64,000 nucleotides of DNA from Ylistrum balloti. Taxonomy: Eukaryota. The position numbers were made by a program, and so were the translations under genes. Positions within the stretch are counted from its first letter, which is position 1. The number at the start of each line of letters is the position of its first letter. Of this stretch, positions 1-46,645 are shown piece by piece. The stretch lies in contig NW_026781945.1 of NCBI RefSeq assembly GCF_031769215.1, positions 744,001 through 808,000 of the forward strand. Direction: 5' to 3'. Below the pieces are notes generated by a model. That model had not been told where the DNA came from and did no database searches. It saw only the letters and a program-made list of their open reading frames with translations.

Positions 1-3000
1 TTAACCTGTAAAACATCTACATCTGGTCCGAGACCACCAAAATCAATTGTATCTCAGTCAAAATGTCAACAAATATTGTATCATTGCCATGTAATAAGCC
101 CGCCTCTTTTATTAGAAGTCTTGTTTTGAATACCTGGGTTCTTTACAGTATAAATGCAGTAATATTTATTCTTCAATGTTTGTTCAGAAATAGGTTGTAC
201 AGATCATCAGAATGTGATGTTGTATGTCGACATCAAACCAACACGCATTAAAATCAGTCCATACCAAGGTTTCTAGGGTTTTATTTTCATTATTTTATCA
301 ACTTAGGTGATATATTTGTGTAAATTTTTCAGTACGTTTGTAGAGTGCAGTATTTAAGAAGTGGTAGCAACACCTAAGTTTATGTAAATGAATTTACAGC
401 TCTGTCACTGCTACAAACGTCTTTCATTGTACATGTTTTGTATGAGAACCCTGCCATAAATGTTTACCCTGCCATGTAATGACCTATACATTTTAGACTA
501 GTTAGGAACTGGACAAGAGTTCGTAATATGCAGGTTTATGGTATACACAGGTTTGAGTTAGGGAGAAATGTAAATATTTGCTGTTGGTGAAGCTGATGAA
601 TGTGATATTAATTTTTTTAAAATGAATAATTAATTGTTGCCTTTGTGTATTAATTGATGACTTCGTATGTTAAATTCATAAATTTCACATGTATCACATG
701 AAATCTGCTGACTTGTTTTGCTTAAATGTTTTGTTCTTTGTCTTTAGATTATTACCTGTACAAGGACTCTCTGAATTAATGATTTTTTTCTGAAGATGCT
801 AAATGACTTTTTTACACTAATACAAGTGTATTTTTCCCCCAAAAATAGCACTTTAGCATCATTTAAGTAGTAATATAAATTGTTATAAATTGTAAACACG
901 TCTTAAAAATATCAAATATCATTTAAAAATCATACTCCAATACCACTGTGCATACTATAATGAATATCTGGTAGTTTTAACCAGTAGATGTGTTACTGTA
1001 TAAAGTGCTTATTTACATCTAAACATTGTTTATTTTAGTTAAAAACTATTCAATGTTTTTGTTTTATTTCCATTCTACTCAGGAAATGAGTGTTTTGTAG
1101 TATTTTTCCTCATTACTTGTTAATTGTGTTTACATTTGAGGCTACAGGTATACCGGGCGGTAAATGAATTTCACACCTAATGGAGATTATATTTATACGA
1201 GAGTGCATGAAGTGCTTTTTATCAAAAAGTTTCATGTGGAAAGTAATTGGTGATAATTTTGTGGATTACTAATGAATGTTAAATCTACAGTATGATATAT
1301 AATAAAATTACTTTGGTTTGTTCAAAATTCAGAATTGAACCTTGTTATGTATTATAAAGTCTTGAAGTGTTGTAATGATAGCACTTCTATAGTTTTTGTG
1401 TGTCAGAGTAATCTCTGTCAAGGATATTTTATTTAGAAACAGGGACAGGGAATTTGTTGAGCACAGTCACTAAACATTTCCCTAGGCTACTTGAACATCT
1501 CACTTAAAGTCTGATGAAAATACAGGCTTTATCAGTAAAGGGTAAAATATTTTTGTAAAAGTTACAGATATCTGTTTAAACTTTGACTTTTTGTAATATT
1601 TCTTAATGGGATTAGAAAGTAATCTTCAATAAATACAATTAAATGAAGTCATATTTTAATGAAATGCATGAAATTTGAAGACATTTTTAGAACAACTTAC
1701 TCAATCAAAGCAAATGACTTGAAGATCGATTTTTTTATGAAGCTCGATTTTTGTGGTTTTTCAAAATAAATGAAAATGAAACATCCTCAAAAGTTAATAA
1801 TTTCACACCATAGTAAAATGTTGAAATTTTGTGATGAAGACCTTGTAGAAATATTTTGTAGGTGGAGTAGTCAGAACAGAAGGGTAAAGTCTTGTTGACC
1901 TTCAGTTATTAGTACTTGTTATAGAGAAGCTCACATTCATTTCTGGAGCTTAGGTCCAGTCTAACATAGGAAATGGTCATCTTGTTGAAGTTCAGCCTGA
2001 TGGGTGAATAGTCTAGTTATCAAACCAGGAATTTGTTTTTAAGATTTGTAATCTTTGTTCTTGAAGTGTTAACTATAAACATTAGCTTTAGGCTACTTAA
2101 AGATTAACATCCGTAATTTTAGTGTATTCATCTCTGACTTTATCAACACTTAACACTAACATTTTGTCATAGATTCCACTTCGTATAAAAATAATAAAAA
2201 ACAAACTTAAATGAAATCACATCAGTCATTTTAACTAGTCACTGTAATATTGCTTTAGTGGGAATACTGTGATACCAACATCAACAATCTGTTTCAATTT
2301 TTAAATCCTTTTGAACATAAATTACACTTTAAACTTGATGTCAGTTGCAACTTGTTGCCTAGGATGATGTCAGTTGCCACTTGATGCCTAGAATGATTGC
2401 ATCTTTTTGTTGAAAAGGTCACTCTGACTGGGACTCCTACTTATTGATATTTCTGCTTAATACTACCTTTTTTAAATTGGATATTGATATTGTCACTATT
2501 GAAAAATATTCTTTTTTGTTGTTGTTTTATCAGCAAATGACTTGGTATTATATATCTTTCCCTAAAAAGTGTGTTGGTAGCTACAATTGAAACCATACTT
2601 TCATGTCTACTTCCACCTTATATTTCATTGTAACTCTGCGCCTTATCATTAACATGGATAATTGTTCAGTGGGAATTTTAAAAGGGATTGGGTTATTGTT
2701 AATAGATGTTGTGATAATACATCATATTTCATCTGTAACATTATGTAAATCAGACACTCCAAGGGGATGATTTCATATGAGAGAACTGCATGCTTAGGTT
2801 GTCCTAGGTTCCTCTCTCACTAGGTTTTGTTCAGATGTCTCACAAATTGGTGTTGGTTAAGATGCTGTATTTCGAGAAATTCATATCCATATAGGATGAA
2901 TGAAGAAACTGTGCAATAGTGTTTGATGAAAAACATATTCATATATTCACAATAAATCCTACAATGTATTAAAAAGGTTTTGTTTTTCTTTTTATCCTTT

Positions 3001-3927
3001 ATATCGATATAGATATATGTAATGTTTACTACTAGTCTTCAAAACAAGAACATATACCTTAAATGCTGCATATCATGTCTAGCAAATTCTCATCAATGAT
3101 CAAGATTAATTCTCTAATACCCTTTCTCTGCATCCGGCTATGTTTTAGAACACACGGTTTTCAACAAAAACAAGATGAATTATAAATGTCTTGCGTTCCT
3201 TCTCTGTTTGATAGTGTTAGATTAAAAACAAGGAATATCCTTTCTGAGTATTTTAGGATACAATGATTGTATAAAACACACCAACGTTAATAGCACCTGA
3301 CGATACCAATTATAGACACAGCATGTTGACCGAATTTAATTGTATCAGACAGTTGTATAGTCCTTCTAGAACTCCTCATTCTTAAACTCATGGGCACGAC
3401 TGAGAAAAATCCAAATTGGTCAAATAAAATACCAAAATCGATCTGCTGAGGTGCACTCTTACCTTAAAACTACAATTGGACGAATTTGATTATTTTCAAT
3501 ATTGAACATTTTAAAAAGATTATCGATTCTGAACAGCCCTATACTAGTCAAATAAGTGACATGTTGGGTTAACAAACAAGAACACAGGTAAATCGTATAT
3601 AAGTTATTTTACATACTAGTGTTGTGTCCATGTCCCAACCTAAACTTATAACATGCTCTAGCGACACGGCAGTAATCATGTAACGTTTGTCGTTTACCTT
3701 TAGATCTGCCAGGGATCACACCTTGGACCTCTGACTTCAGAGAGGTTCTTTCTAACCGAATCGCTAGAAAGCAGCAAGTATACATCACTTAACATCTTAC
3801 ACAAATAATGTTTCTTGTATCATGTATGGTTCTACTGTTCAGTAACAATCATCAAATGCGGGAATTATTTCTGTCCATTTCTGGTCTAATTCGAAACGAA
3901 TGCCTGAAGGTACAAATCATTTGTATA

Positions 3928-5210
3928 TCCTAGAGGGAAGACATACCTGTATGATGTAGGTCCTTAGTATCACTAACGAGTCCTAGAGAGAAGACACACT
4001 TGTATGGTGTAGGAGCTTAGTATCACTAACGAGTCCTAGAGAGAAGACACACTTGTATGGTGTAGGACCTTAGTATCACTAACGAGTCCTAGAGAGAAGA
4101 CACACTTGTATGGTGTAGGACCTTAGTATCACTAACGAGTCCTAGAGAGAAGACACACTTGTATGGTGTAGGACCTTAGTATCACTAACGAGTCCTAGAG
4201 AGAAGACACACTTGTATGGTGTAGGACCTTAGTATCACTAACGAGTCCTAGAGAGAAGACACACCTGTATGATGTAGGTCCTAAGTATCACTAACGAGCC
4301 CTAGAGAGAAGACACACTTGTATGGTGTAGGACCTTAGTATCACTAACGAGTCCTAGAGAGAAGACACACCTGTATGATGTAGGTCCTAAGTATCACTAA
4401 CGAGCCCTAGAGAGAAGACACACCTGTATGGTGTAACATCACTAACTAGCCCTAGAGAGAAGACACGACTGTATCGTGTAGCATCTCTAACGAGTCCTAG
4501 AGAGAAGACACACCTGTATGGTGTAGGTACTTAGCATCACTAACGAGCCCTAGAGAGAAGACACACCTGTATGATATAGGTCCTTAGCATCACAAACGAG
4601 TCCTACAGAGAAGACACACCGGTATGTGTAGATCATTAGCATCACTAACGAGCCCTAGAGAGAAGACACACCTGTTTGATATAGGTACTTAACATCACTA
4701 ACGAGCCCTAGAGAGAAGACACACCTGTATGGTGTAGGTCCTAATCATCACTAACGAGCCCTAGAGAGAAGACACACCTGTATGGTGCAGGTCCTTAGTA
4801 TCACTAACGAGTCCTAGAGAGAAGACACGACTGTATGGTGTAGCATCTCTAACGAGTCCTAGAGAGAAGACACGACCGTATGGTGTAGTATCACTAACAA
4901 GTCCTAGAGGGAAGGCACACCTGTATAATGTAGCATCACTAACGATTCCTAGAGGGAAGGCACAGCTTTATAATGTAGCATCACTAACGAGTCCTAGAGA
5001 GAAGACACACCTGTATGGTGCAGTTCCTTAGTATCACTAACGAGTCCTAGTGAGAAGACACACCTGTATGGTGTAGCATTTCTAACGAGTCCTAGAGAGA
5101 AGACACGACCGTATGGTGTAGTACACTAACGAGTCCTAGAGAGAAGACACGACCGTATGGTGTAGTACACTAACGAGTCCTAGAGAGAAGGCACGGCTGT
5201 ATGATGCAGT
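3928..5210 (+). repeat. Minisatellite of ~26 units (44/45/53 bp) derived from a minimal hammerhead ribozyme, catalytic core inactivated (array A)
   Basis: The 45-bp unit CATCA-CTAACGA-GTCC-TAGAGAGAAGACACGACTG-TA-TGGTG-TAG aligns without gaps to the hammerhead monomer at 42175-42216. CUGANGA is CUAACGA and GAAA is GACA. The 53-bp units carry an extra ~8 nt (GACCTTAG). Confidence 0.85.
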
Positions 5211-5553
5211 TCATATTAACGTTTGCTATACAACTGTATCTAATTCTGACTTTGTGTTGAACATTTGCTTTATGTACTCTCTTCACCACTCCTTACCTAT
5301 GTGAGAAGTTTTACTCCGCACCAAACATTTCTGGTTCCATACCTAATTTGTTATATGAAATAATAAGAACAGTTTCTAAATATAATATTTTATTTGAAAC
5401 AAACATCAACATTAGGACAAGTAGCAAAAACAATGCATGATATTAAAAATTCAGTTCAATATAATTTTCAATGTATCAAATTTATATCTCAATACATCTT
5501 TATCAATCCACTTTTTAAGTAAATACCAAAGTGAAACAATGTATGTACCCATT

Positions 5554-8792: not shown

Positions 8793-9551
8793 AACATGAC
8801 TGATATCTCCTGTATTATTGGTATACCAGAAACATGGCTGATATCTCCTGTATTATTGATATACCAGAAACATGGCTGATGTCTCTTGTATTATTGATAT
8901 ACCAGAAACATGGCTGATGTCTCTTGTATTATTGGTATACCAGAAACATGGCTGATATCTCCTGTATTATTGATATACCAGAAACATGGCTGATGTCTCT
9001 TGTATTATTGATATACCAGAAACATGGCTGATGTCTCTTGTATTATTGATATACCAGAAACATGACTGATATCTCCTGTATTATTGGTATACCAGAAACA
9101 TGGCTGATATCTCCTGTATTGTTGGTATACTAGATACCTAGATGATATCTCCTGTATTATTGATATACCAGAAACATGGCTGATGTCTCTTGTATTATTG
9201 ATATACCAGAAACATGGCTGATATCTCCTGTATTATTGATATACCAGAAACATGGCTGATATCTCCTGTATTATTGGTATACCAGAAACATGCCTGATAT
9301 CTCCTGTATTATTGGTATACCAGAAGCATAGCTGATATCTCCTGTATTATTGATATACCAGAAACATGGCTGATATCTCCTCTCCTGTATTATTGATATA
9401 CCAGAAACATGGCTGACGTCTCATGTATTATTGATATACCAGAAACATTAGTGATATCTCCTGTATTATTGTTATACCAGAAACATGGCTGATATCTCCT
9501 GTATTATTGGTATACCAGAAACATGGCTGATATCTCCTGTATTACTGGTAT
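8793..9551. repeat. 38-bp minisatellite, ~20 units
   Basis: Unit GATATCTCCTGTATTATTGATATACCAGAAACATGGCT. Confidence 0.97.
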
Positions 9552-37887: not shown

Positions 37888-39159
37888 TTATAAAGCTATG
37901 ACTTTCTCTCGCTCGATCTGTATTGTTATTATCAACTCGCGGCGATATTGACGGTTTATATCACTGTAAGATGGTGGAGAGACAGTTTGAACGAAACAAA
38001 ATCATTTTCACTATTTCATTATGTTTTAAATATGACAGAGAAAGAGTTGAATCATTCTTTCACTATATCGATATGATATATTAATGCTACATAAAAATAT
38101 TTTCACTGCCATCTGCCTCTGTTAATTTGCCATACAATTTTCCTTTGAAGCTGAAATTTTCATATTTCATATTCATGGGAGCAACATAAGTGATGTTTTC
38201 GTTGAATATAATTTAATTAGTAAGTAATAAGACGTTTTTTTTCCCATGCATTAGATATGGATAACCTGCGTTGACTGTTTTAATGCCAACTACAAATATT
38301 AGACAGCTATTTTTAGAAATGTGTTTGTAACTATGATATACAAATGCAAGAGAGTTAACACGAATATCACTTCAATTAACATATATGTCTTTTTCACTAA
38401 TAGACATCAACGGTCCTGTGCTCTTTTCATGATTTGCGTGTTCAGTGGTACTTGTTTTTACTATCTGTTTTCGTTACTGTTAAAGTTGCTTATCAAAGCT
38501 TTCCAAATACAGATTATAAATCTAGATGCAGTATCATGAAATATAAAATGGGATAATCGTATTATTTTAAGTGATCCTAAAAATCTAGAAATACCAAATA
38601 TGAAGTACTACTGTACTATATATAGCATAACCTTGTGCTTGATGGAATTGCCTATATACAATACATAAACAACCCAGGTTCGACATATATACATGGCTCA
38701 CACTGTACCATCACTACAGTTCAATATATCAGAAACACGATACACATCGCGTGATACAATGAAGAAAGAATTTTATCGCCAGTCACACACTGAAAGTTGG
38801 CATCATACGATAGCAACCATACCATAGCATAGCTGATCATCATAGTTTAGCCCTTCTAATAGAGATAAGGTAATGTTTTGTTGATGTAGCAGTCGAAAGA
38901 GAATCAGGAGTTTTAAAGAATTTCTTATGCTTAAAGGTATATTTATTTATCAAAACATTTGCATATTTCCAATATGTCCCTTGTATTTCGTTTAGTCCTA
39001 CAAGAATGACATATCATGTTTATCTTTCATCGACGTGTCATTCATATGATGAATAGGTTAGCAAGTATGAACCTCCACTTAAGGTTTTTGACTTTTATTT
39101 CGAGCGATTGGATCTTCCTCAATCGTCTCCTAAGTTACAACAGTTTAGGCCCCTTTTAA

Positions 39160-39429
39160 CACCACCGAGTTGTCCTAGAAGGACGCAACAGCTGTATGAT
39201 GTAGTATCACTGACAAGTCCTAGAAGGACGAAACAGCTGTGTGATGCAGCATCACTGACGAGTCCTAGAAGGACAAAACAGCTGTGTGATGCAGCATCAC
39301 TGACAAGTCCTAGCATTACAAAACAGCTGTATGATGTATTCTCACTGACAAGTCCTAGAAGGACGAAACAGCTGTATGATGTAGTATCACTGACAAGTCC
39401 TAGAAGGACGAAACAGCTGTATGGTGCAG
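39160..39429 (+). ncRNA. Tandem array of six 45-bp minimal type I hammerhead-like units (array B), cores mostly mutated
   Basis: Unit TATCA-CTGACAA-GTCC-TAGAA-GGAC-GAAA-CAGCTG-TA-TGATG. Four units have G8->A; the one CTGACGA unit has AAAA instead of GAAA and a GUG site. Confidence 0.85.
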
Positions 39430-41486
39430 TTGAATTCATCACTTGTCTCTGCCTTATCCTTTCCTTAATTTCAATCGAAAGGTGCTGGTAACTTTTGTTT
39501 GTCTTTGTATAATCTCAGAAAGAAAGTGTTCTACGGAATCGGAAGTAGCAGATAACGATCTATACTGGTCAAAAGGAAATTAACAGTGGTGAAACCAACA
39601 ATGCAAGTCATAACTGATTGATTGTCGGATATAGCTTCGCCATAGACTAAGAGACCAGAAAAGAAACATATCCATAGTAACACAAATATTACCAGAGGAA
39701 CTCTTTGATAAAATAAGTGCACATTATCGTCATTAATGATGTATATACCGAATGTCAGTATGTTAAGATCAAAAGGAAAAATAAATAGTGATACAGAACT
39801 AGTAAGTCAATGTAACACAAAGTTTAGAAAATATAATGTCACTTTGATCAAATTAAGTGGACTTCAACAGAAGGTAGACCTAGATACATTTTGTTCTTTC
39901 AAAATTTAGAATAAATCTCAATAAAAAATCGAAGTCGATAAACATATTTTATTGCAATGTGAGATAATTCTGTTAGATTTCTAGTCACCAAGTCCGGCGT
40001 GTATTAACTTGGTTCTCCTTTTTGAGAGAGAGAGATAGATTACTTCTGTGGGCATTACTGGTATCAGCAATATTGCAGAAGACGCTTACACTTCCGGAAC
40101 ACATATCGTCTTTTGGGTTTTTCAATGATATTAATGTAGATCTTTTACTTGTTCAGGTTTGGCTTCCGTTTATCGATTTGGAGAAAGAAAATTCGAAATG
40201 TGAATGTGGAGCTGCAGAATTACGATTTTGGTGACGTGTTGGTATCTTTGACGCATGCTAAAAATTCATATCTAAATACAGCATGTACTGGCACTACTGA
40301 CATAGAAAACATTAACAAAATTGGCACAAAAGAGGAAACATTGTGAACATAAAGTATATACAGATATATAAACCAATAACATCTGAAGAAGAATATAGAC
40401 ACAGGCTTCACAAACTATGACTGAATAGAATTAATCTACTAAGCTAAATTGAAATATGTTGTTATAATGGTTAACCAGTAAGCACATCATAGTCCTACCA
40501 ATAAAATCTACTGGTCCCTTCCCCTCTCTCCTTCTCCGCAAAGTTATATATACTTACATTTTCCATGACCCGCTTCCAAAATGGTCAGTACAACAACAAA
40601 GCTCACAAGTATGTCCATCTCTTGTCATAAGGCGCTCGACATGGTACTACACTATACTACGTACATAAAACACTATGAACATTACATAAGCCTTGCTTCA
40701 TAGGGCCATGTTTAGTGTTCCCAGATCGATAGCAAGTCTTTAGTGAGCGGTGCAGTCCCTCTAGATAGTCAATACATTGATTAGTATCGAGAGCCCCACT
40801 CCATATCCCGTGATGGTGTTACTGTATCGATCCGGAAAACACTGACGCAGCTTCCAGCTTGTGCAGAATCAAAGTCGGCTACTGTTCGCCTAATAATTTT
40901 ATTTGACGCTTTCAATCACATTTAATCATAGATATTTGGTGCATTCTGTATTGATTTTATTTCCTTTTTGTTGGAGGAATGAATTCTGGTGGTTTTCTTT
41001 CCGTTGGTAGAACACATCTTTTGCCTGCCTAGTACTGTTCAGTTATAAGATGATAGTACAAACATCTGTCATCAAGTCTTCTTTCTATCGTTATTTTCAC
41101 GACTTTGGTATAAACTTTGATCATTAGCTAAGTTTGAGATATTTCGTAATATCACTTTTTGATATAAAATGTCGAATTCGAAAGTTTTATTAATTGCAGT
41201 ATCTCGACTCCTTCCGTTTATGGTCCAGATTCAAAACTGATTCTCAAAGTTTTGACAGAATTTTCATTTCATCCCTGAAAACAAGACCCTTCGTGCTCGT
41301 TGAAAACCAACAACAATGATTTCTCTCTATAAGCGTCGCCCAAGTTCGAGAGTCTTGTTTGGTTCCAAGGACTAGTGCTCCTATATTGATTCAAGTCCTG
41401 GTATACTCTGTGAAAGTTGTTTTTTCACGACAGTTCAAATTTTCCAAATTTTGCCATTTAAAAGCAGAATTGATATATTTTTCATT

Positions 41487-41677
41487 NNNNNNNNNNNNNN
41501 NNNNNNNNNNNNNNNNNNNNNNNNNNNNNNNNNNNNNNNNNNNNNNNNNNNNNNNNNNNNNNNNNNNNNNNNNNNNNNNNNNNNNNNNNNNNNNNNNNNN
41601 NNNNNNNNNNNNNNNNNNNNNNNNNNNNNNNNNNNNNNNNNNNNNNNNNNNNNNNNNNNNNNNNNNNNNNNNNNNNN
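41487..41677. other. Assembly gap (191 N)
   Basis: Run of N. Confidence 1.
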
Positions 41678-41705
41678 ACAAATTGTCTTTATTGTGCAAA
41701 AACGG

Positions 41706-41859
41706 CTTGTATAAAATTTTCTCAAGGAACAGGAGGAAGTCAACGGCTAGGATGTCCTGAAATTCCTTGAGGAATTTTCATACAGGATATTTTCGATGAG
41801 ATATTAGCTGAGGAAAATCTCGACTTGAGGAAATCTCAAGTTGAGATGTTTTATACAAG
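41706..41859. mobile_element. Small foldback/MITE-like element
   Basis: Imperfect ~20-bp terminal inverted repeats (CTTGTATAAAATTTTCTCAA / TTGAGATGTTTTATACAAG) and an internal 11-bp hairpin at 41819-41845. Confidence 0.55.
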
Positions 41860-41985
41860 TGGGGCCAGATATATCAAAATTATGAAATTGATTGAATAAT
41901 TTGGCTAGTTCACTATTTAGATTGTGACATCACTTTCGATCAATTTGCCTCAGTTGCCTCCTTGGATTCAAAATGTATGCCCTTA

Positions 41986-42443
41986 GCATCACCGACGCGT
42001 CCCAGAAGGACAAAACAGTTGTATGATGTTTTATCACTGACAAGTCCAAGCAGGACAAAACAGCTGCATGGTGTATATAGCATCACCGACGAGTCCTAGA
42101 AGGATGAAATAGCTGTATGATATATATAGCATCACTGACGAGTCCTAGCAGAACAAAACAGCTGTATGATATGTTATCACTGACGAGTCCTAGCAGGACG
42201 AAACAGCTGTCTGATGTAGTATCATTGACGAGTCCTGGCAGGACGAAACATCTGTATTGAACGACGCTTTTCACTTGTGTGTCTTTTGTACAATCTGACG
42301 AGTCCTAGAAGGACGAAACAGCTGTCTGATGTAGTATCATTGACGAGTCCTGGCAGGACGAAACATCTGTATTGAACGACGCTTTTCACTTGTGTGTTGT
42401 ACAATCTGACGAGTCCTAGAAAGACGAAACAGCTGTATGATGC
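41986..42443 (+). ncRNA. Tandem array of nine minimal type I hammerhead units (array C), including intact cores
   Basis: Same monomer as array B. CTGACGA...GAAA intact at 42180, 42295 and 42406; a ~30-nt non-ribozyme spacer occurs twice. Confidence 0.88.
42175..42216 (+). ncRNA. Canonical minimal type I hammerhead ribozyme (predicted cleavage 3' of C42211)
   Basis: Stem I TATCA/TGATG; core CTGACGA 42180-42186; stem II GTCC-TAGCA-GGAC; GAAA 42200-42203; palindromic stem III ACAGCTGT; GUC triplet. Confidence 0.88.
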
Positions 42444-42880
42444 TGTATAATTCTATCATTTGTCTCTATATATTTTTCTAAATTTGTCATGAACGACGCT
42501 TTTCACTTGTGTGTCTTTTGTACAATCTTTATACAGGTACGGTTGTCTTATTACAACTCTATTTCTACAATGAGGCAATTATTGCAGTTTACAGTAGACG
42601 AAATAAATGCAACAAATCACTACAACTACGGATTCACTTACACGGTATTCAAACTATTTTGAAGCTGGACATGTAGGTCTGTGAAGATTAGGCCTCATTG
42701 TAAATCTACACTTGATTTAACTCTCCACTCGTGACCTATCACGGAAGAAAATTATTCTTACTATTTAGACAGAGCATTATCAGCCAGTCCATCCTTTGGG
42801 TATCAGGTACTCGACACTTTCTAAAACGTACCAAGGAAATCGTATTTCCATGAAAGCCCATGGATACATAAAGGTATGCT

Positions 42881-43622
42881 CTATTATCTTTGTTATGACA
42901 AGAAGATTATCTCATACAGAAAGCCATTATCTTTGTTATGACAAGAAGATTATCTCATACAGAAAACCATTATCTTTGTTATGACAAGAAGATTATCTCA
43001 TACAGAAAGCCATTATCTTTGTTATGACAAGAAGATTATCTCATACAGAAAGCCATTATCTTTGTTATGACAAGAAGATTACTCATACAGAAAGCCATTA
43101 TCTTTGTTATGACAAGAAGATTATCTCATACAGAAAACCATTATCTTTGTTATGACAAGAAGATTATCTCATACAGAAAGACATTATCTTTGTTATGACA
43201 AGAAGATTATCTCATACAGAAAGCCATTATCTTTGTTATGACAAGAAGATTATCTCATACAGAAAGCCATTATCTTTGTTATGACAAGAAGATTATCTCA
43301 TACAGAAAGCCATTATCTTTGTTATGACAAGAAGATTATCTCATACAGAAAACCATTATCTTTGTTATGACAAGAAGATTATCTCATACAGAAAGACATT
43401 ATCTTTGTTATGACAAGAAGATTATCTCATACAGAAAGCCATTATCTTTGTTATGACAAGAAGATTATCTCATACAGAAAGCCATTATCTTTGTTATGAC
43501 AAGAAGATTATCTCATACAGAAAGACATTATCTTTGTTATGACAAGAAGATTATCTCATACAGAAAGCCATTATCTTTGTTATGACAAGAAGATTATCTC
43601 ATACAGAAAACCATTATCTTTG
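42881..43622. repeat. 43-bp minisatellite, ~17 highly homogeneous units
   Basis: Unit CCATTATCTTTGTTATGACAAGAAGATTATCTCATACAGAAAG. Confidence 0.97.
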
Positions 43623-44348
43623 AAAGGGAAATGATCTGATTCCATGCCCGGTCAACGTTTAAAGTTTATGTATATCAACAGTCTTCATTCTAATTCAATT
43701 CCGCGAAACCATAGGAACAAATGGAGACCTTGAAAAAGTACAAGAATAGCAATATAAGGTGTTCCAAAAGGTTAGGCGTTTTCTGCTTCATCGATGAAAC
43801 TAGTCATCTAAATCTTGGTCAATCAAACCACAGGCAGTTGGTTCACTGATCAAAAATAGTACACACATATCTCTTATATTAAACAAACATGCTATTTTTT
43901 CATCAGCCAGCTAAGAGTCAGTGATCCAAGTTAGTAATTTCAAGCCCTCAGATTTAAAACTAACTTAACAACATAGGACTACCAGGAATACTGACGAGCA
44001 TCAAATATGTCAAAATTCATATCACGCAAGGAAATACAGAAAACAGACTAAATGACACGGGACCATAAAAGAGGCTAGCTCATTGTCTCCGAATGTGTTG
44101 ACGCCTCTAGATTCTACACGCAGAAAAGTGCTAGAGCTTTACAAGCTGGGGAACTTCGCAATTGTCATAATATTGTGGAACATCAGTATTTCAACAAACA
44201 TTCAATTTATCAATTTAACACAACACAGATACAGTTTACTTTCTTTCCTTTAATTCTTGATATACTTTACAATTATGTTGTCAGAAATGTCCTTTAGCTG
44301 TTTAACTGATACAAAGTGATACGAAAGGAAGATAGAATATATCTGGTT

Positions 44349-45083
44349 TCATGGAGTCAGTTTTTCAAGTAAATGGCCACGACTAGAGAGAAATTTCAGC
44401 AGGTCAGCAAACGACATCCGGGTAGCATAACGTCGGTCCAAAGGATGGAAACTGAGAAGCTTTTCTTCGCAGCAGACCGAGTGTGTAGCTGCAGCTCTAA
44501 CTTGACCGTCCGTGTCTTTCGGTAACGCTAACGGAGTAACCTCCCCTGAACAAACACCCAGAATCCGCGAAAGCTCAGAAGAGGAAGCAAAGGAAAAGTT
44601 TCTGTATGCTTTTAGTTTTTGTTTTAAAGATTTCAAATCAACGACTTCTTCTTCGTGACAGATTACCAAGTAGAAGCGTCCTTTCCTGTCTTTAAGAAAT
44701 AAGTTCTTGCAATAGACGGTTTCGTCATCTGGCTGTCTATCTTCCTTTGGTACATACTTGACGCTCTCTGTTGAAATCTCTAATTCTTGAAGGGTTTCAA
44801 AAAGTTGCAATGATCTGTTGTTCAGATCCGGTGGCAGTATGTCTGGTTTTGCTAATGGATTAACGTCCGCAGTAACTTTATGTCCGTTTTCCAGAAGAAT
44901 TTGAGAATTTGGAATTGTTTTGAAAACTTGAAAATCTGACCTTGGAAATAAATATGAAAGAAAGAAACCCCCAGCATCTCCCTCCCCGAGCCCCAACCCC
45001 CGGGCCCCATCGCGGGCCCTTTTCTCGTAGGTCGCCATTTTGATGGTTTTGACGTGGCCACCTGCAAACATCTTCACATCCAT
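44349..45083 (-). CDS. PRORSD1: PrdX/ProX (YbaK-superfamily) aminoacyl-tRNA deacylase domain protein, intronless 244-aa ORF
   Basis: KNLFLKDRKG, FASSSEL, GEVTPLAL, FHPL, FLSSRGH match the ProX/PrdX pattern. The start codon is uncertain; there is a ~90-aa N-terminal extension. Confidence 0.82.
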   Translation of the reverse strand: MDVKMFAGGHVKTIKMATYEKRARDGARGLGLGEGDAGGFFLSYLFPRSDFQVFKTIPNSQILLENGHKVTADVNPLAKPDILPPDLNNRSLQLFETLQELEISTESVKYVPKEDRQPDDETVYCKNLFLKDRKGRFYLVICHEEEVVDLKSLKQKLKAYRNFSFASSSELSRILGVCSGEVTPLALPKDTDGQVRAAATHSVCCEEKLLSFHPLDRRYATRMSFADLLKFLSSRGHLLEKLTP

Positions 45084-46645
45084 CTGTACAGCAACTTTTT
45101 GTTGAGATGTTCCTCGCTCTGAAACGGAACCTGGTTTTTTTCAGAAGAGCCACACCTCCGTCTTTTCCGCATGATCTCCCATCACGCGTATCCTATGATC
45201 ATGGTTTCTGGGCACATACATGTATGCACTTGCATTGCCCTTGGCCATGAGCATTGATGAGCGTCCACACTTATCCCATATCTATATCAACTGCAGCAAA
45301 GCAATCGAAATGCACGTGTATTTGAAACACGTGCATTCTAACATGGCTTGCTAGACGTGTATGCATATCATTCATTACTCAGTGGCATCAAATCGATGCC
45401 ACTATTCATCGACATGTTCGTCCTCTGTCATATCGTGCTTCAGGGATCAATCTCCTTGACCCACCATATTAACTTCATATCGTCCATGCGGTCCATTAGT
45501 TTCTCCTTAAAGCATCATTTTCCTTGTCTTCAAACCTTCATGATTCCTGCAGAGAAAAAAAAAGAAATTTCAGTAAGTTCCATTAATGCTACACATGTGT
45601 GCATATATTTGGAAATATTTTGCGCTGATATTTAGATTAAAGGCTGCAAGTCTTTGTTCAATATTGCGGAGTTGCAGCACAATACAGGCAAACACCAATC
45701 GGAGATTGTATACCTAGGTACCATTTCTCTCCCCTCGACCGTGTTGATGAAAGTGTTGTAACATGATTAAATTTTAAAACGGCTTGCCATATAATACACT
45801 TGAGCCGCGTAACCTTACCATTAGACAGGGACACGTGTAGATCTGTAATCTCTCTGTTTATCACGAACAGTTACCGCATTGATGTCCGCATAAAAAACAA
45901 TACAATATCTCCAACTGATTTTATCATACACTTATTCACGGTATTATTTTTGTGTTTGCTGTTTATCCATCATGTGCTATTCGCATTGTTGGTTGTTTAT
46001 ATACATACATATATAAATACACTAGTATCTATAAAATGAAATCGATAAATGTAGTTCAGATTTTAATTAAATATTATTTATATTTCCAACAGAGAGTATA
46101 ATATGTTCCAAAATACATTTTCGTATACAATCTACATTCATAGGAAATCGCTAAATCAGATGCTTGGAGGTTCAGTAAAAAAAAGGTTAAACATGTCTGT
46201 GTCTAATCGGTGAAACTACACAAGTATACGTTACTGTTACAATTTGACAAACCTTTCATTTAGCTCAGAAATCAGTTCAGCACATGATTAACGGTGATAT
46301 GCCCGGTAAGAAATGGCAGTTTGATCACCAACAACAACCTTAAATAGAAACCCAAATTTATTTTTAGCACATTCTGCAATAGAATGTGAGGTATGCTTAT
46401 GTAGTCGATAATAAATCCACAATTACAATTCTTCAAAAAACGAATCATGAACAATTAAGTCATTTTGAATAATCATATCTACTTAATTTATATATTGTTT
46501 TCTTGTTATATGTACTATCTTTTCGTTTTGATATAATTGTTTTGTTTTCTTTTTTATCGACTACATGCTCCTGAGTTGTTTCACTGCATTGCATCACCTT
46601 GAGGAGCCGCATATTTTTAGAGTCCGTAATATATAACAACTCCTT

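What the first reader, a model, noticed from the sequence alone, without database searches (positions are those of the whole stretch)
39040..42530. Arrays B and C sit inside a shared dispersed element: a ribozyme-satellite family with a life cycle
Seen: about 100 bp on each side of B and C are recognisably homologous (upstream GAATA..CACT..TGAC..TTTCGA..CTCCT; downstream AATTC.ATCA.TTGTCTCT..TGTCTTTGTA.AATCT). Array A ends with the same GCAGTT as B. All three are on the + strand. In this window catalytic integrity falls as homogeneous copy number rises (C: some intact; B: G8A; A: dead, ~26 units); n=3, so anecdotal. Inference: a non-autonomous retrozyme/PLE-derived element that seeds minisatellites, with stable expansion only once self-cleavage is lost.
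Basis: inference. Interest (0 to 1): 0.82.

Follow-up and report, generated by a model that had tools for sequence, protein, structure and literature searches.

The report
Scallop retrozyme carrying hammerhead minisatellites

Summary
B (39065-39515) and C (41865-42528) share about 100 bp of flank on each side. Their similarity stops at those edges, and the same flanks recur on many other contigs (at least 2021 candidate 3' flanks).

The element is about 396 bp: a head, one type I hammerhead, and an 85-bp tail ending ..GTACAATCTT. Copies have a fixed 3' end, graded 5' truncation, head-to-tail partial tandems and head-to-head inverted pairs. There is no tRNA head and no terminal inverted repeats. 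This is the profile of a non-LTR retrozyme or Penelope-like-element (PLE) dependent retroelement, already described in mussels. I could not fetch an autonomous partner.

The 45-bp arrays are in-register amplifications of the hammerhead alone.

The "life cycle" idea fails:
- The genome holds 19,716 near-consensus units, 3,532 of them with a canonical core.
- There are 3,270 intact unit-to-unit junctions but only 278 intact unit-to-tail junctions.
- The 3' half is intact before 27.6% of array junctions and 9.9% of tail junctions.
- Some arrays of 39 to over 70 units are mostly intact.

Decay looks neutral. G8A and G12A, the changes seen in B, sit on CpG hot spots. Array A's dead unit is private to its locus.

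Earlier follow-ups of this scan found the same retrozyme family elsewhere in this genome. Verdict: real, ordinary, a new member of a known kind.

The parts
39065..39171 (+). Element copy B: 5'-truncated head, family-profile positions about 123-211
   Evidence: nhmmer hit 39065-39208, E 1.9e-29. Homologous to heads on other contigs.
39165..39430 (+). Array B: six 45-bp hammerhead units, none intact (G8A in four, G12A in two, H17 to G in two)
39431..39515 (+). Element copy B: tail, ending ..TGTATAATCT
   Evidence: nhmmer hit reaching profile end 341 at 39515, E 3.6e-31. Tail alignment.
41865..41984 (+). Element copy C: head fragment from profile position 82, abutting an unrelated foldback repeat
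   Evidence: nhmmer hit 41865-42029, E 8.3e-38.
41985..42257 (+). Array C, first part: six units of 45-49 bp, one with an intact core (42180-42211)
42258..42442 (+). Array C, second part: a private higher-order repeat of 115 bp (two hammerheads plus the last ~40 nt of the tail), which starts at 42180 in the first part and runs for 2.3 copies. Intact core at 42295-42326.
   Evidence: TRF period 115, 95% matches. Tail-end fragments at 42250-42296 and 42365-42407. Unit states.
42443..42528 (+). Element copy C: tail, ending ..GTACAATCT
   Evidence: nhmmer hit to profile end 341, E 6.5e-28.
41698..41868 (.). Unrelated high-copy foldback repeat (MITE-like), not part of the element
   Evidence: 94% identity to L044:3464-3634. 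Opposite-strand joints and very high depth in public contigs.
41487..41677 (.). Assembly gap, outside both homologous blocks. Left untouched.
3957..5261 (+). Array A in a third copy of the element: 26 dead units (periods 53 and 45) followed by a diverged partial tail
   Evidence: The unit is private to this locus.
3265..3530 (-). Single-ribozyme copy, head-to-head with array A and 427 bp from it
   Evidence: nhmmer profile positions 45-340, E 1e-31.
27918..28194 (+). Near full-length copy with a decayed ribozyme
   Evidence: nhmmer profile positions 2-326, E 2.1e-37.

Best explanation
B and C are two independent, 5'-truncated insertions of a non-coding retroelement of about 396 bp. It belongs to the non-LTR retrozyme type, most likely copied by the reverse transcriptase of Penelope-like elements.

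Anatomy. A unit has a head of about 265 bp, one type I hammerhead, and a tail of about 85 bp that always ends ..GTACAATCTT. The hammerhead has helix I of 6 bp (GCAUCA/UGAUGC), helix II GUCC/GGAC closed by UAGAA, and a helix III of only 2 bp closed by the palindrome AGCU.

How it would work (inferred). With so short a helix III, one ribozyme should be weak. Two neighbouring ribozymes can pair through ACAGCUGU into a double hammerhead and cut after GUA or GUC. By analogy with mussel, coral and axolotl retrozymes, longer-than-unit transcripts would be cut to unit length and circularised. Reverse transcription would then start from a fixed 3' end. That would give the observed 5'-truncated copies, partial head-to-tail tandems and inverted pairs.

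The arrays. They are a second, nested level of repetition. The 45 bp that make up the ribozyme, bounded by an AG..AG microhomology, were amplified in register between head and tail. Most arrays share one array-type unit with a C-to-T change in loop 1. So arrays appear mostly inherited from array-bearing sources (inferred from one shared junction change) and are then remodelled locally by slippage or unequal exchange.

Decay. After insertion the units decay neutrally, fastest at the two CpG sites that produce G8A and G12A.

Shown: the anatomy, the dispersal, the truncation pattern and the counts. Inferred: transcription, cleavage, circles, and the identity of the reverse transcriptase.
For: Dispersal:
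- 1645, 2021 and 601 first-look candidates for array plus flanks, 3' flank and 5' flank, spread over many contigs.

Copy structure:
- Copies picked by their tail alone mostly carry one hammerhead.
- In 51 copies with a tail, the head starts anywhere from profile position 2 to 269, while the 3' end is constant.
- Tail runs directly into head in L040, L043, L048, L049 and L050.
- Head-to-head inverted pairs less than 500 bp apart occur on C88, C374, C715 and C104.

The ribozyme:
- Rfam Hammerhead_1 scores 34.1 bits in L040, at the gathering score of 34.
- A fold of three units predicts the 8-bp inter-unit helix III.
- In array copies the ribozyme core is about 95% identical to the family consensus while their tails are about 73% identical. 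This suggests constraint on the ribozyme in source copies.

The arrays:
- The commonest 45-mer is identical across arrays on at least 8 contigs.
- There are 11,391 array junctions TGATGYAGCATCA genome-wide.

Exclusions: no tRNA or other RNA family in the head.

Literature:
- Mussel retrozymes are 350-390 bp with a type I hammerhead (PMC7229834).
- The architecture of helix I 6 bp, helix II 4 bp and helix III 1-2 bp with a palindromic loop is the usual metazoan form (PMC4209133).
- 5' truncation, partial tandems and adjacent inverted copies are PLE hallmarks (PMC8557442).
- Retrozyme units of 51-972 bp are related to PLE pseudo-LTRs (bioRxiv 10.64898/2026.07.22.740005).
Against: - No autonomous PLE sharing this tail or hammerhead was examined. 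PLE-like GIY-YIG reading frames exist in the genome (72 matches), but their DNA could not be fetched.
- No target-site duplications were found.
- No long multimers of the 396-bp unit appeared in the sample, only partial tandems.
- There is no direct evidence of transcription, cleavage or circles. The public runs laid on C are contigs of uncertain kind and show only repeat-derived pieces.
- Within arrays, the catalytic core is no less mutated than the loops. So present copies show no sign of selection for catalysis.
Confidence: 0.75

Rival explanations
1. One reading: an active ribozyme blocks stable array growth, so arrays expand only after self-cleavage is lost, and integrity falls as copy number rises.
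For: - In the window, A (26 units) is dead, B (6 units) is dead and C is partly intact.
- A's dead unit did expand in place and is found nowhere else.
Against: - Exact genome-wide counts: 3,270 intact unit-to-unit junctions against 278 intact unit-to-tail junctions.
- The 3' half is intact before 27.6% of array junctions and 9.9% of tail junctions, Fisher p = 6e-32.
- Arrays of 39, 53 and 70 units have 23, 35 and 49 intact cores. Single copies have 5 of 29 intact.
- Caveats: amplified units are not independent, and the array sample favours consensus-like arrays.
Confidence: 0.04
2. B and C are the two halves of a local segmental duplication, not copies of a mobile element.
For: They lie 2.4 kb apart on the same strand.
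Against: - Similarity stops at 39117-39515 versus 41948-42528.
- The same flanks occur on many other contigs.
- The two heads start at different profile positions, 123 and 82.
Confidence: 0.01
3. The element is a tandem-repeat-carrying DNA transposon derivative (MITE, or Helitron/Helentron-borne satellite) of the kind described in clams and oysters.
For: - Bivalve genomes hold such elements with a central array between two flanks (PMC3879986).
- The overall layout of flank, array, flank looks similar.
Against: - Graded 5' truncation with a fixed 3' end.
- Head-to-tail partial tandems.
- No terminal inverted repeats beyond 5 nt.
- The repeated unit is a hammerhead typical of retrozymes.
Confidence: 0.05
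4. The element is a SINE-like passenger of a LINE rather than of a PLE, and shares the LINE's 3' tail.
For: - Fixed 3' end and 5' truncation also fit LINE machinery.
- One copy has its last ~20 nt repeated four times, as in some LINE/SINE tails (L047).
- No partner was identified.
Against: - No tRNA, 5S or 7SL head.
- No poly(A) or simple-repeat tail.
- Head-to-tail stubs before full copies and head-to-head pairs are PLE traits (PMC8557442).
- Type I hammerheads are tied to PLEs and retrozymes (PMC4209133, PMC7229834).
Confidence: 0.1
5. The 45-nt arrays are kept by the host for a function, for example as a source of small RNAs or as ribozyme-processed transcripts.
For: - Identical 45-mers occur at many loci.
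- The ribozyme is better conserved than the flanks.
Against: - Variant events per site are no lower at the 11 core positions than in the loops: 7.6 against 9.1, p = 0.65.
- The most frequent changes are CpG transitions that kill the core (G8A, G12A).
- Only 18% of the 19,716 units are canonical.
Confidence: 0.05

Closest known systems
Non-LTR retrozymes of metazoans, especially the 350-390-bp repeats of the mussel Mytilus galloprovincialis (Cervera and de la Pena 2020, PMC7229834)
   Same: - Non-coding unit of about 396 bp with low G+C (39%).
- One type I hammerhead per unit with a short helix III and a palindromic loop.
- Thousands of copies in a bivalve.
- Head-to-tail arrangement.
- No LTR, primer-binding site or polypurine tract.
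   Different: - Here most sampled copies are solo or partial-tandem monomers.
- The ribozyme alone has been amplified inside the unit into 45-bp arrays of 2 to roughly 180 units.
- Expression and circular RNA were not tested.
Hammerheads in the pseudo-LTRs of Penelope-like elements, and retrozymes derived from them (PMC4209133, PMC8557442, bioRxiv 10.64898/2026.07.22.740005)
   Same: - 5' truncation, partial tandems and adjacent inverted copies.
- A ribozyme built to act as a dimer.
- Retrozyme units as short as 51 bp and arrays of up to 300 units have been reported in other animals.
   Different: - No sequence link to an autonomous PLE of this genome was shown.
- Helix II here is the 4-bp canonical metazoan form, not the long helix II of the minimal PLE hammerheads.
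Classical hammerhead satellites (newt satellite 2, Schistosoma SM-alpha, Dolichopoda pDo500; PMC2837043)
   Same: Tandem DNA repeats whose transcripts carry a hammerhead that works best as a multimer.
   Different: Those units are 330-500 bp with one ribozyme and a long spacer. Here the repeating unit is the ribozyme itself, with no spacer.
Tandem-repeat-containing MITEs and Helentron-borne satellites of bivalves (for example DTC84, PMC3879986)
   Same: Short arrays embedded between two conserved flanks of a dispersed element in a bivalve genome.
   Different: Those are DNA transposon derivatives with both ends intact. This element shows retroelement-type truncation, and its repeat is a ribozyme.

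Membership tests
Hammerhead ribozyme, type I (Rfam RF00163) | Conserved core C3 U4 G5 A6 N7 G8 A9, G12 A13 A14, pair A15.1-U16.1, and H17 not G | tested here: met
   All present in the family's commonest unit and in C at 42180-42211 and 42295-42326. The genome holds 3,532 exact canonical cores against 0 for the reversed control.
Hammerhead ribozyme, type I (Rfam RF00163) | Score at or above the curated gathering score of 34 bits | tested here: inconclusive
   34.1 bits in L040, 33.3 bits in the window, and no hit in gathering mode on the window. Borderline because the motif is so short.
Hammerhead ribozyme, type I (Rfam RF00163) | Self-cleavage | not testable with these tools
   Needs in vitro transcription. 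The folds only predict helices I and II and an inter-unit helix III.
Non-LTR retrozyme (PMC7229834) | Short non-coding unit (150-450 bp), low G+C, carrying a type I hammerhead, without LTR, primer-binding site or polypurine tract | tested here: met
   Unit of 396 bp with 38.9% G+C. One hammerhead per unit. No terminal repeats seen in the copies printed.
Non-LTR retrozyme (PMC7229834) | Head-to-tail tandem organisation of the unit | tested here: inconclusive
   Partial tandems (tail running into head) in 5 of 20 tail-selected loci. No multimers of the 396-bp unit in the sample.
Non-LTR retrozyme (PMC7229834) | Expression as unit-length linear and circular RNA | tested here: inconclusive
   Contigs of runs only guessed to be RNA hold consensus-like units, but the unique flanks have zero depth and no ends can be read.
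PLE-derived non-autonomous element | Graded 5' truncation, fixed 3' end, partial tandems, adjacent inverted 5'-truncated copies | tested here: met
   Head starts spread over profile positions 2-269 in 51 copies, and four head-to-head pairs.
PLE-derived non-autonomous element | Sequence similarity of its end to the pseudo-LTR or 3' end of an autonomous PLE in the same genome | not tested
   72 GIY-YIG matches exist, including 755-aa open frames in a 5.36-kb tandem on C422.
tRNA-derived SINE | tRNA-like, 5S or 7SL head | tested here: not met
   ARAGORN finds nothing in five loci, and Rfam finds only the hammerhead.
MITE or Helitron-borne bivalve satellite | Both ends always present, terminal inverted repeats or Helitron ends, short fixed target duplication | tested here: not met
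   5' ends are graded. There is no TIR beyond AAGAT/ATCTT, and no target duplication adjacent to the ends.

The most novel reading that the evidence does not exclude
The 45-nt array unit is itself a minimal retrozyme. Array transcripts would cut themselves into 45-nt RNAs that are circularised and copied by rolling-circle reverse transcription. On this reading the identical unit is found at hundreds of loci because a source made only of ribozyme is still active. That would make it the smallest natural self-processing mobile RNA known in an animal.
Probability: 0.1. Interest if true: 0.7.

Novelty: new member of a known kind. Interest (0 to 1): 0.3.

Why it matters
The result assigns about 0.9 Mb of this genome (19,716 ribozyme units, 0.14%) to one retrozyme family. 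It explains arrays A, B and C together, and it removes an attractive but wrong selection story.

It has a practical side for annotation. The unit is 45 bp, which is 15 codons, so the arrays stay open in several frames and can be miscalled as genes of up to 619 aa.

For ribozyme biology it offers a natural series of 1 to roughly 180 directly abutting hammerheads, with recurrent natural G8A and G12A knock-outs. That series could be used to test how dimer-dependent hammerheads behave in multimers. The underlying kind of element, however, is already described in other bivalves and in vertebrates.

Tried and rejected
- Rfam in gathering mode found nothing in the window. The motif only appears in E-value mode.
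- A fuzzy regular expression for units was too insensitive. I replaced it with an iterated nhmmer profile.
- A search for target-site duplications, using the longest common word between the 46 nt on either side of each copy, gave only chance-sized matches.
For the same reason the GIY-YIG loci could not be cut out, so the autonomous partner could not be examined.
- Ten non-array open reading frames in the held loci gave no reverse transcriptase of PLE type. They matched only RNase H, PLAT, tRNA_edit and DUF3659.
- Public runs were Logan contigs of uncertain kind. They show repeat-derived pieces only, with no read ends, so they say nothing about cleavage.
- The search of earlier findings by sequence was blank.
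- A test for selection on the core within arrays was negative.
- A tail alignment did not separate array-bearing copies from single copies. So the order of events, whether the array was gained or collapsed, stays open.
Full report
What is at the coordinates.

Tandem Repeats Finder reports array B at 39172-39430 (period 45, 5.8 copies), array C at 41984-42442 (periods 45, 94 and 115) and array A at 3928-5210 (periods 53 and 45). The sequence was read.

The 45-nt unit is a complete hammerhead:
- core CUGAnGA;
- helix II GUCC/GGAC closed by UAGAA;
- GAA;
- a 2-bp helix III (AC/GU) closed by the palindrome AGCU;
- the cleavage triplet GUA or GUC;
- helix I UGAUG(C)/(G)CAUCA.

Rfam's curated threshold is just missed in the window, with Hammerhead_1 at 33.3 bits against 34. 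This is why the default scan is blank. A single copy on another contig reaches 34.1 bits. This architecture is the one described as usual for metazoan type I hammerheads (PMC4209133).

The observation.

The flanks of B and C align at about 70% identity over roughly 100 bp on each side. A direct comparison of 37000-41486 with 41678-45000 finds similarity only between 39117-39515 and 41948-42528. A long local duplication is therefore excluded.

The assembly gap at 41487-41677 lies outside both blocks. To its right, 41698-41868 is an unrelated foldback repeat that is 94% identical to L044:3464-3634. To its left the sequence is unique. What the gap hides is unknown, and I did not try to find out. 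It matters only for the B-C distance and for whether C's head continues upstream of the foldback repeat.

The element.

Searches of the window's own genome (648 Mb, 1372 contigs) gave 1645 first-look candidates for B with its flanks, 2021 for a 3' flank and 601 for a 5' flank, on many contigs. Only 40 candidates were scored in each search.

Twenty loci chosen by their 3' flank alone were fetched, so they are unbiased with respect to array length. Most of them carry just one hammerhead.

An iterated nhmmer profile was run over 50 loci and the window. It defines a unit of about 396 bp (L036, reverse strand 2703-3098, 38.9% G+C). The unit has a head of about 265 bp, the ribozyme, and a tail of about 85 bp ending ..GTACAATCTT.

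Structural hallmarks:
- Among 51 copies with a tail, the head starts anywhere from profile position 2 to 269 (6 essentially full, 13 at positions 6-100, 17 at 101-200, 15 beyond 200). The 3' end is constant.
- Full-length heads are preceded by a stub or a partial copy of the tail, and tails often run directly into a head (L040, L043, L048, L049, L050).
- Four head-to-head inverted pairs lie within 500 bp. One is the copy at 3265-3530 facing array A.
- No tRNA or other known RNA lies in the head.
- No terminal inverted repeats and no target duplications were found.

Graded 5' truncation, partial tandems and adjacent inverted copies are the published hallmarks of Penelope-like elements and their non-autonomous passengers (PMC8557442). 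A 350-390-bp non-coding unit with one type I hammerhead is what was described as the mussel retrozyme (PMC7229834). A 2026 preprint relates animal retrozymes, with units of 51-972 bp, to PLE pseudo-LTRs (10.64898/2026.07.22.740005).

The window holds five copies in all: 3265-3530 (-), A 3957-5261, 27918-28194, B 39065-39515 and C 41865-42528.

The arrays.

In every array whose ends are visible, the units sit in register between head and tail. The repeated 45 bp run from AGCATCA.. to ..TGATGC and are bounded by AG on both sides. This microhomology fits slippage or unequal exchange.

Most arrays on different contigs share exactly the same commonest 45-mer, which carries a C-to-T change in loop 1 that the boundary unit lacks. 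The genome holds 11,391 exact array junctions TGATGYAGCATCA. Arrays therefore mostly share ancestry and were not seeded afresh at each locus.

Local remodelling is also clear:
- C has a private 115-bp higher-order repeat that includes the last ~40 nt of the tail.
- L030 has a 90-bp alternation of two unit variants.
- A's unit is private: 23 of 25 genome matches lie inside array A.

The longest array seen spans C48:1207038-1215187, about 8 kb.

The life-cycle claim.

Exact pattern counts over the whole genome, each with a reversed-pattern control of about zero:
- 19,716 units lie within 3 mismatches of the 32-nt core.
- 3,532 units have a fully canonical core.
- 3,270 intact junctions join one unit to the next.
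- 278 intact junctions join a unit to the tail.

Conditioning on an exact junction, the 16-nt 3' half of the ribozyme is intact before 3,141 of 11,391 array junctions (27.6%). It is intact before 76 of 769 tail junctions (9.9%). The odds ratio is 3.5 and Fisher p is 6e-32.

In the sampled loci, single copies have 5 of 29 intact cores. Arrays of 30 or more units have 162 of 339, with individual arrays at 49 of 70, 35 of 53 and 23 of 39.

Two caveats apply. Amplified units are not independent, and the array sample favours consensus-like arrays.

Within 521 array units, variant events per site are no rarer at the 11 core positions than in the loops (7.6 against 9.1, p = 0.65). The most frequent core changes, at G8, G12 and 11.1, sit on CpG dinucleotides. 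So the G8A and G12A changes in B are ordinary CpG decay, and nothing indicates selection for or against catalysis in resident copies.

In array-bearing copies the core is about 95% identical to the family consensus while the tails are about 73% identical. This fits constraint on the ribozyme in the source copies that propagate, but the tail consensus is biased toward one subfamily.

How it probably works.

A fold of three units predicts helices I and II in each unit and an 8-bp helix formed by the ACAGCUGU of neighbouring units. This is the double-hammerhead arrangement expected for ribozymes with a 2-bp helix III (PMC4209133).

By analogy with the studied retrozymes, transcripts longer than one unit would be cut, circularised and reverse transcribed from the fixed 3' end. 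None of these RNA steps is shown here. The four public runs laid on C are Logan contigs whose kind is only guessed. They contain the foldback repeat and consensus-like ribozyme units, the unique flanks have no depth, and they give no ends.

The autonomous partner was not identified. The genome has 72 GIY-YIG matches, including 755-aa open frames in a 5.36-kb tandem on C422. Their DNA could not be fetched. No PLE reading frame lies in the loci I hold.

Earlier notes of this scan.

Follow-ups elsewhere in this genome describe the same situation:
- a hammerhead that is one of more than 3,400 carried by a short retrozyme (s1-262788); my count of canonical cores is 3,532;
- PLE tails whose hammerhead became a minisatellite (s1-254167, s1-240642);
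- an autonomous PLE with a terminal hammerhead (s1-240641).

I treated these as leads only. They call the organism a scallop, which I did not re-test.

Verdict.

The reading as a dispersed retrozyme or PLE-type element is supported on structure. The proposed coupling of ribozyme death and array growth is contradicted. The element is a new member of a known kind. Its one distinctive trait is the nested amplification of the bare ribozyme into 45-bp arrays.

Noticed in passing
L024:1400-3256 (-), L029:1549-3339 (-), L017:318-1955 (+): The array period is 45 bp, which is 15 codons. The hammerhead arrays therefore stay open in several frames and give spurious ORFs of up to 619 aa (repeats such as RRTKQLYDVASLTSP). 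Gene predictors may call these as proteins.
   Followed up: partly
window 41698-41868; L044:3392-3634: A high-copy foldback repeat (MITE-like) abuts the 5' edge of copy C, and another copy lies about 30 nt upstream of a retrozyme in L044. In public contigs it has the highest depth of anything in the stretch.
   Followed up: partly
G000:C422:240415-261997 and C129:50248-67783: GIY-YIG matches inside open frames of 755 aa (425 aa at the first C422 copy). On C422 they repeat every ~5.36 kb, five times. This is probably a tandem of an autonomous Penelope-like element, and a candidate partner of the retrozyme. The DNA could not be fetched.
   Followed up: no
G000:C85:1471104-1471619; C4:355520-357003; C4:392573-392844; C4:609062-609693: Derived arrays of the same ribozyme with other periods (49, 53, 37 and 44 bp), seen in the match lists.
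   Followed up: no
L047 (G000:C369:174780-174959, minus strand) and the ~60 nt after its 3' end: The last ~20 nt of the tail (GTGTCTTTTGTACAATCTTT) are repeated four times after the element's end. This looks like reverse-transcriptase slippage at initiation.
   Followed up: no
L039 (G000:C321:259067-259837): A retrozyme copy is split inside its hammerhead by an unrelated insertion of ~430 bp.
   Followed up: no
window 44352-45140 (-): An open frame of 263 aa with an aminoacyl-tRNA editing domain (Pfam tRNA_edit, E 2.2e-18) lies 1.8 kb from copy C. Whether B and C lie in this gene's intron, UTR or outside it was not resolved.
   Followed up: partly
window 1-64000: There are five copies of the element in 64 kb, and four copies within 1.4 kb in L031, mostly in one orientation. 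The genome-wide lower bound is about one tail per 320 kb. Copies appear to cluster, as reported for PLE-type insertions.
   Followed up: no
window 42883-43622: A very homogeneous 43-bp x 17 minisatellite (97% matches), unrelated to the hammerhead, starts 355 bp after copy C. The window holds several more such arrays (8793-9551, 53070-53987, 54846-56118).
   Followed up: no
tail-to-head junctions in L043, L048, L049, L050: Where a tail runs into the next head, the junction typically reads ..ATCTT-T-AAGAT.., a short palindrome (exact in L043; L048-L050 differ by a base or more). It may be chance or a processing or integration signal.
   Followed up: no
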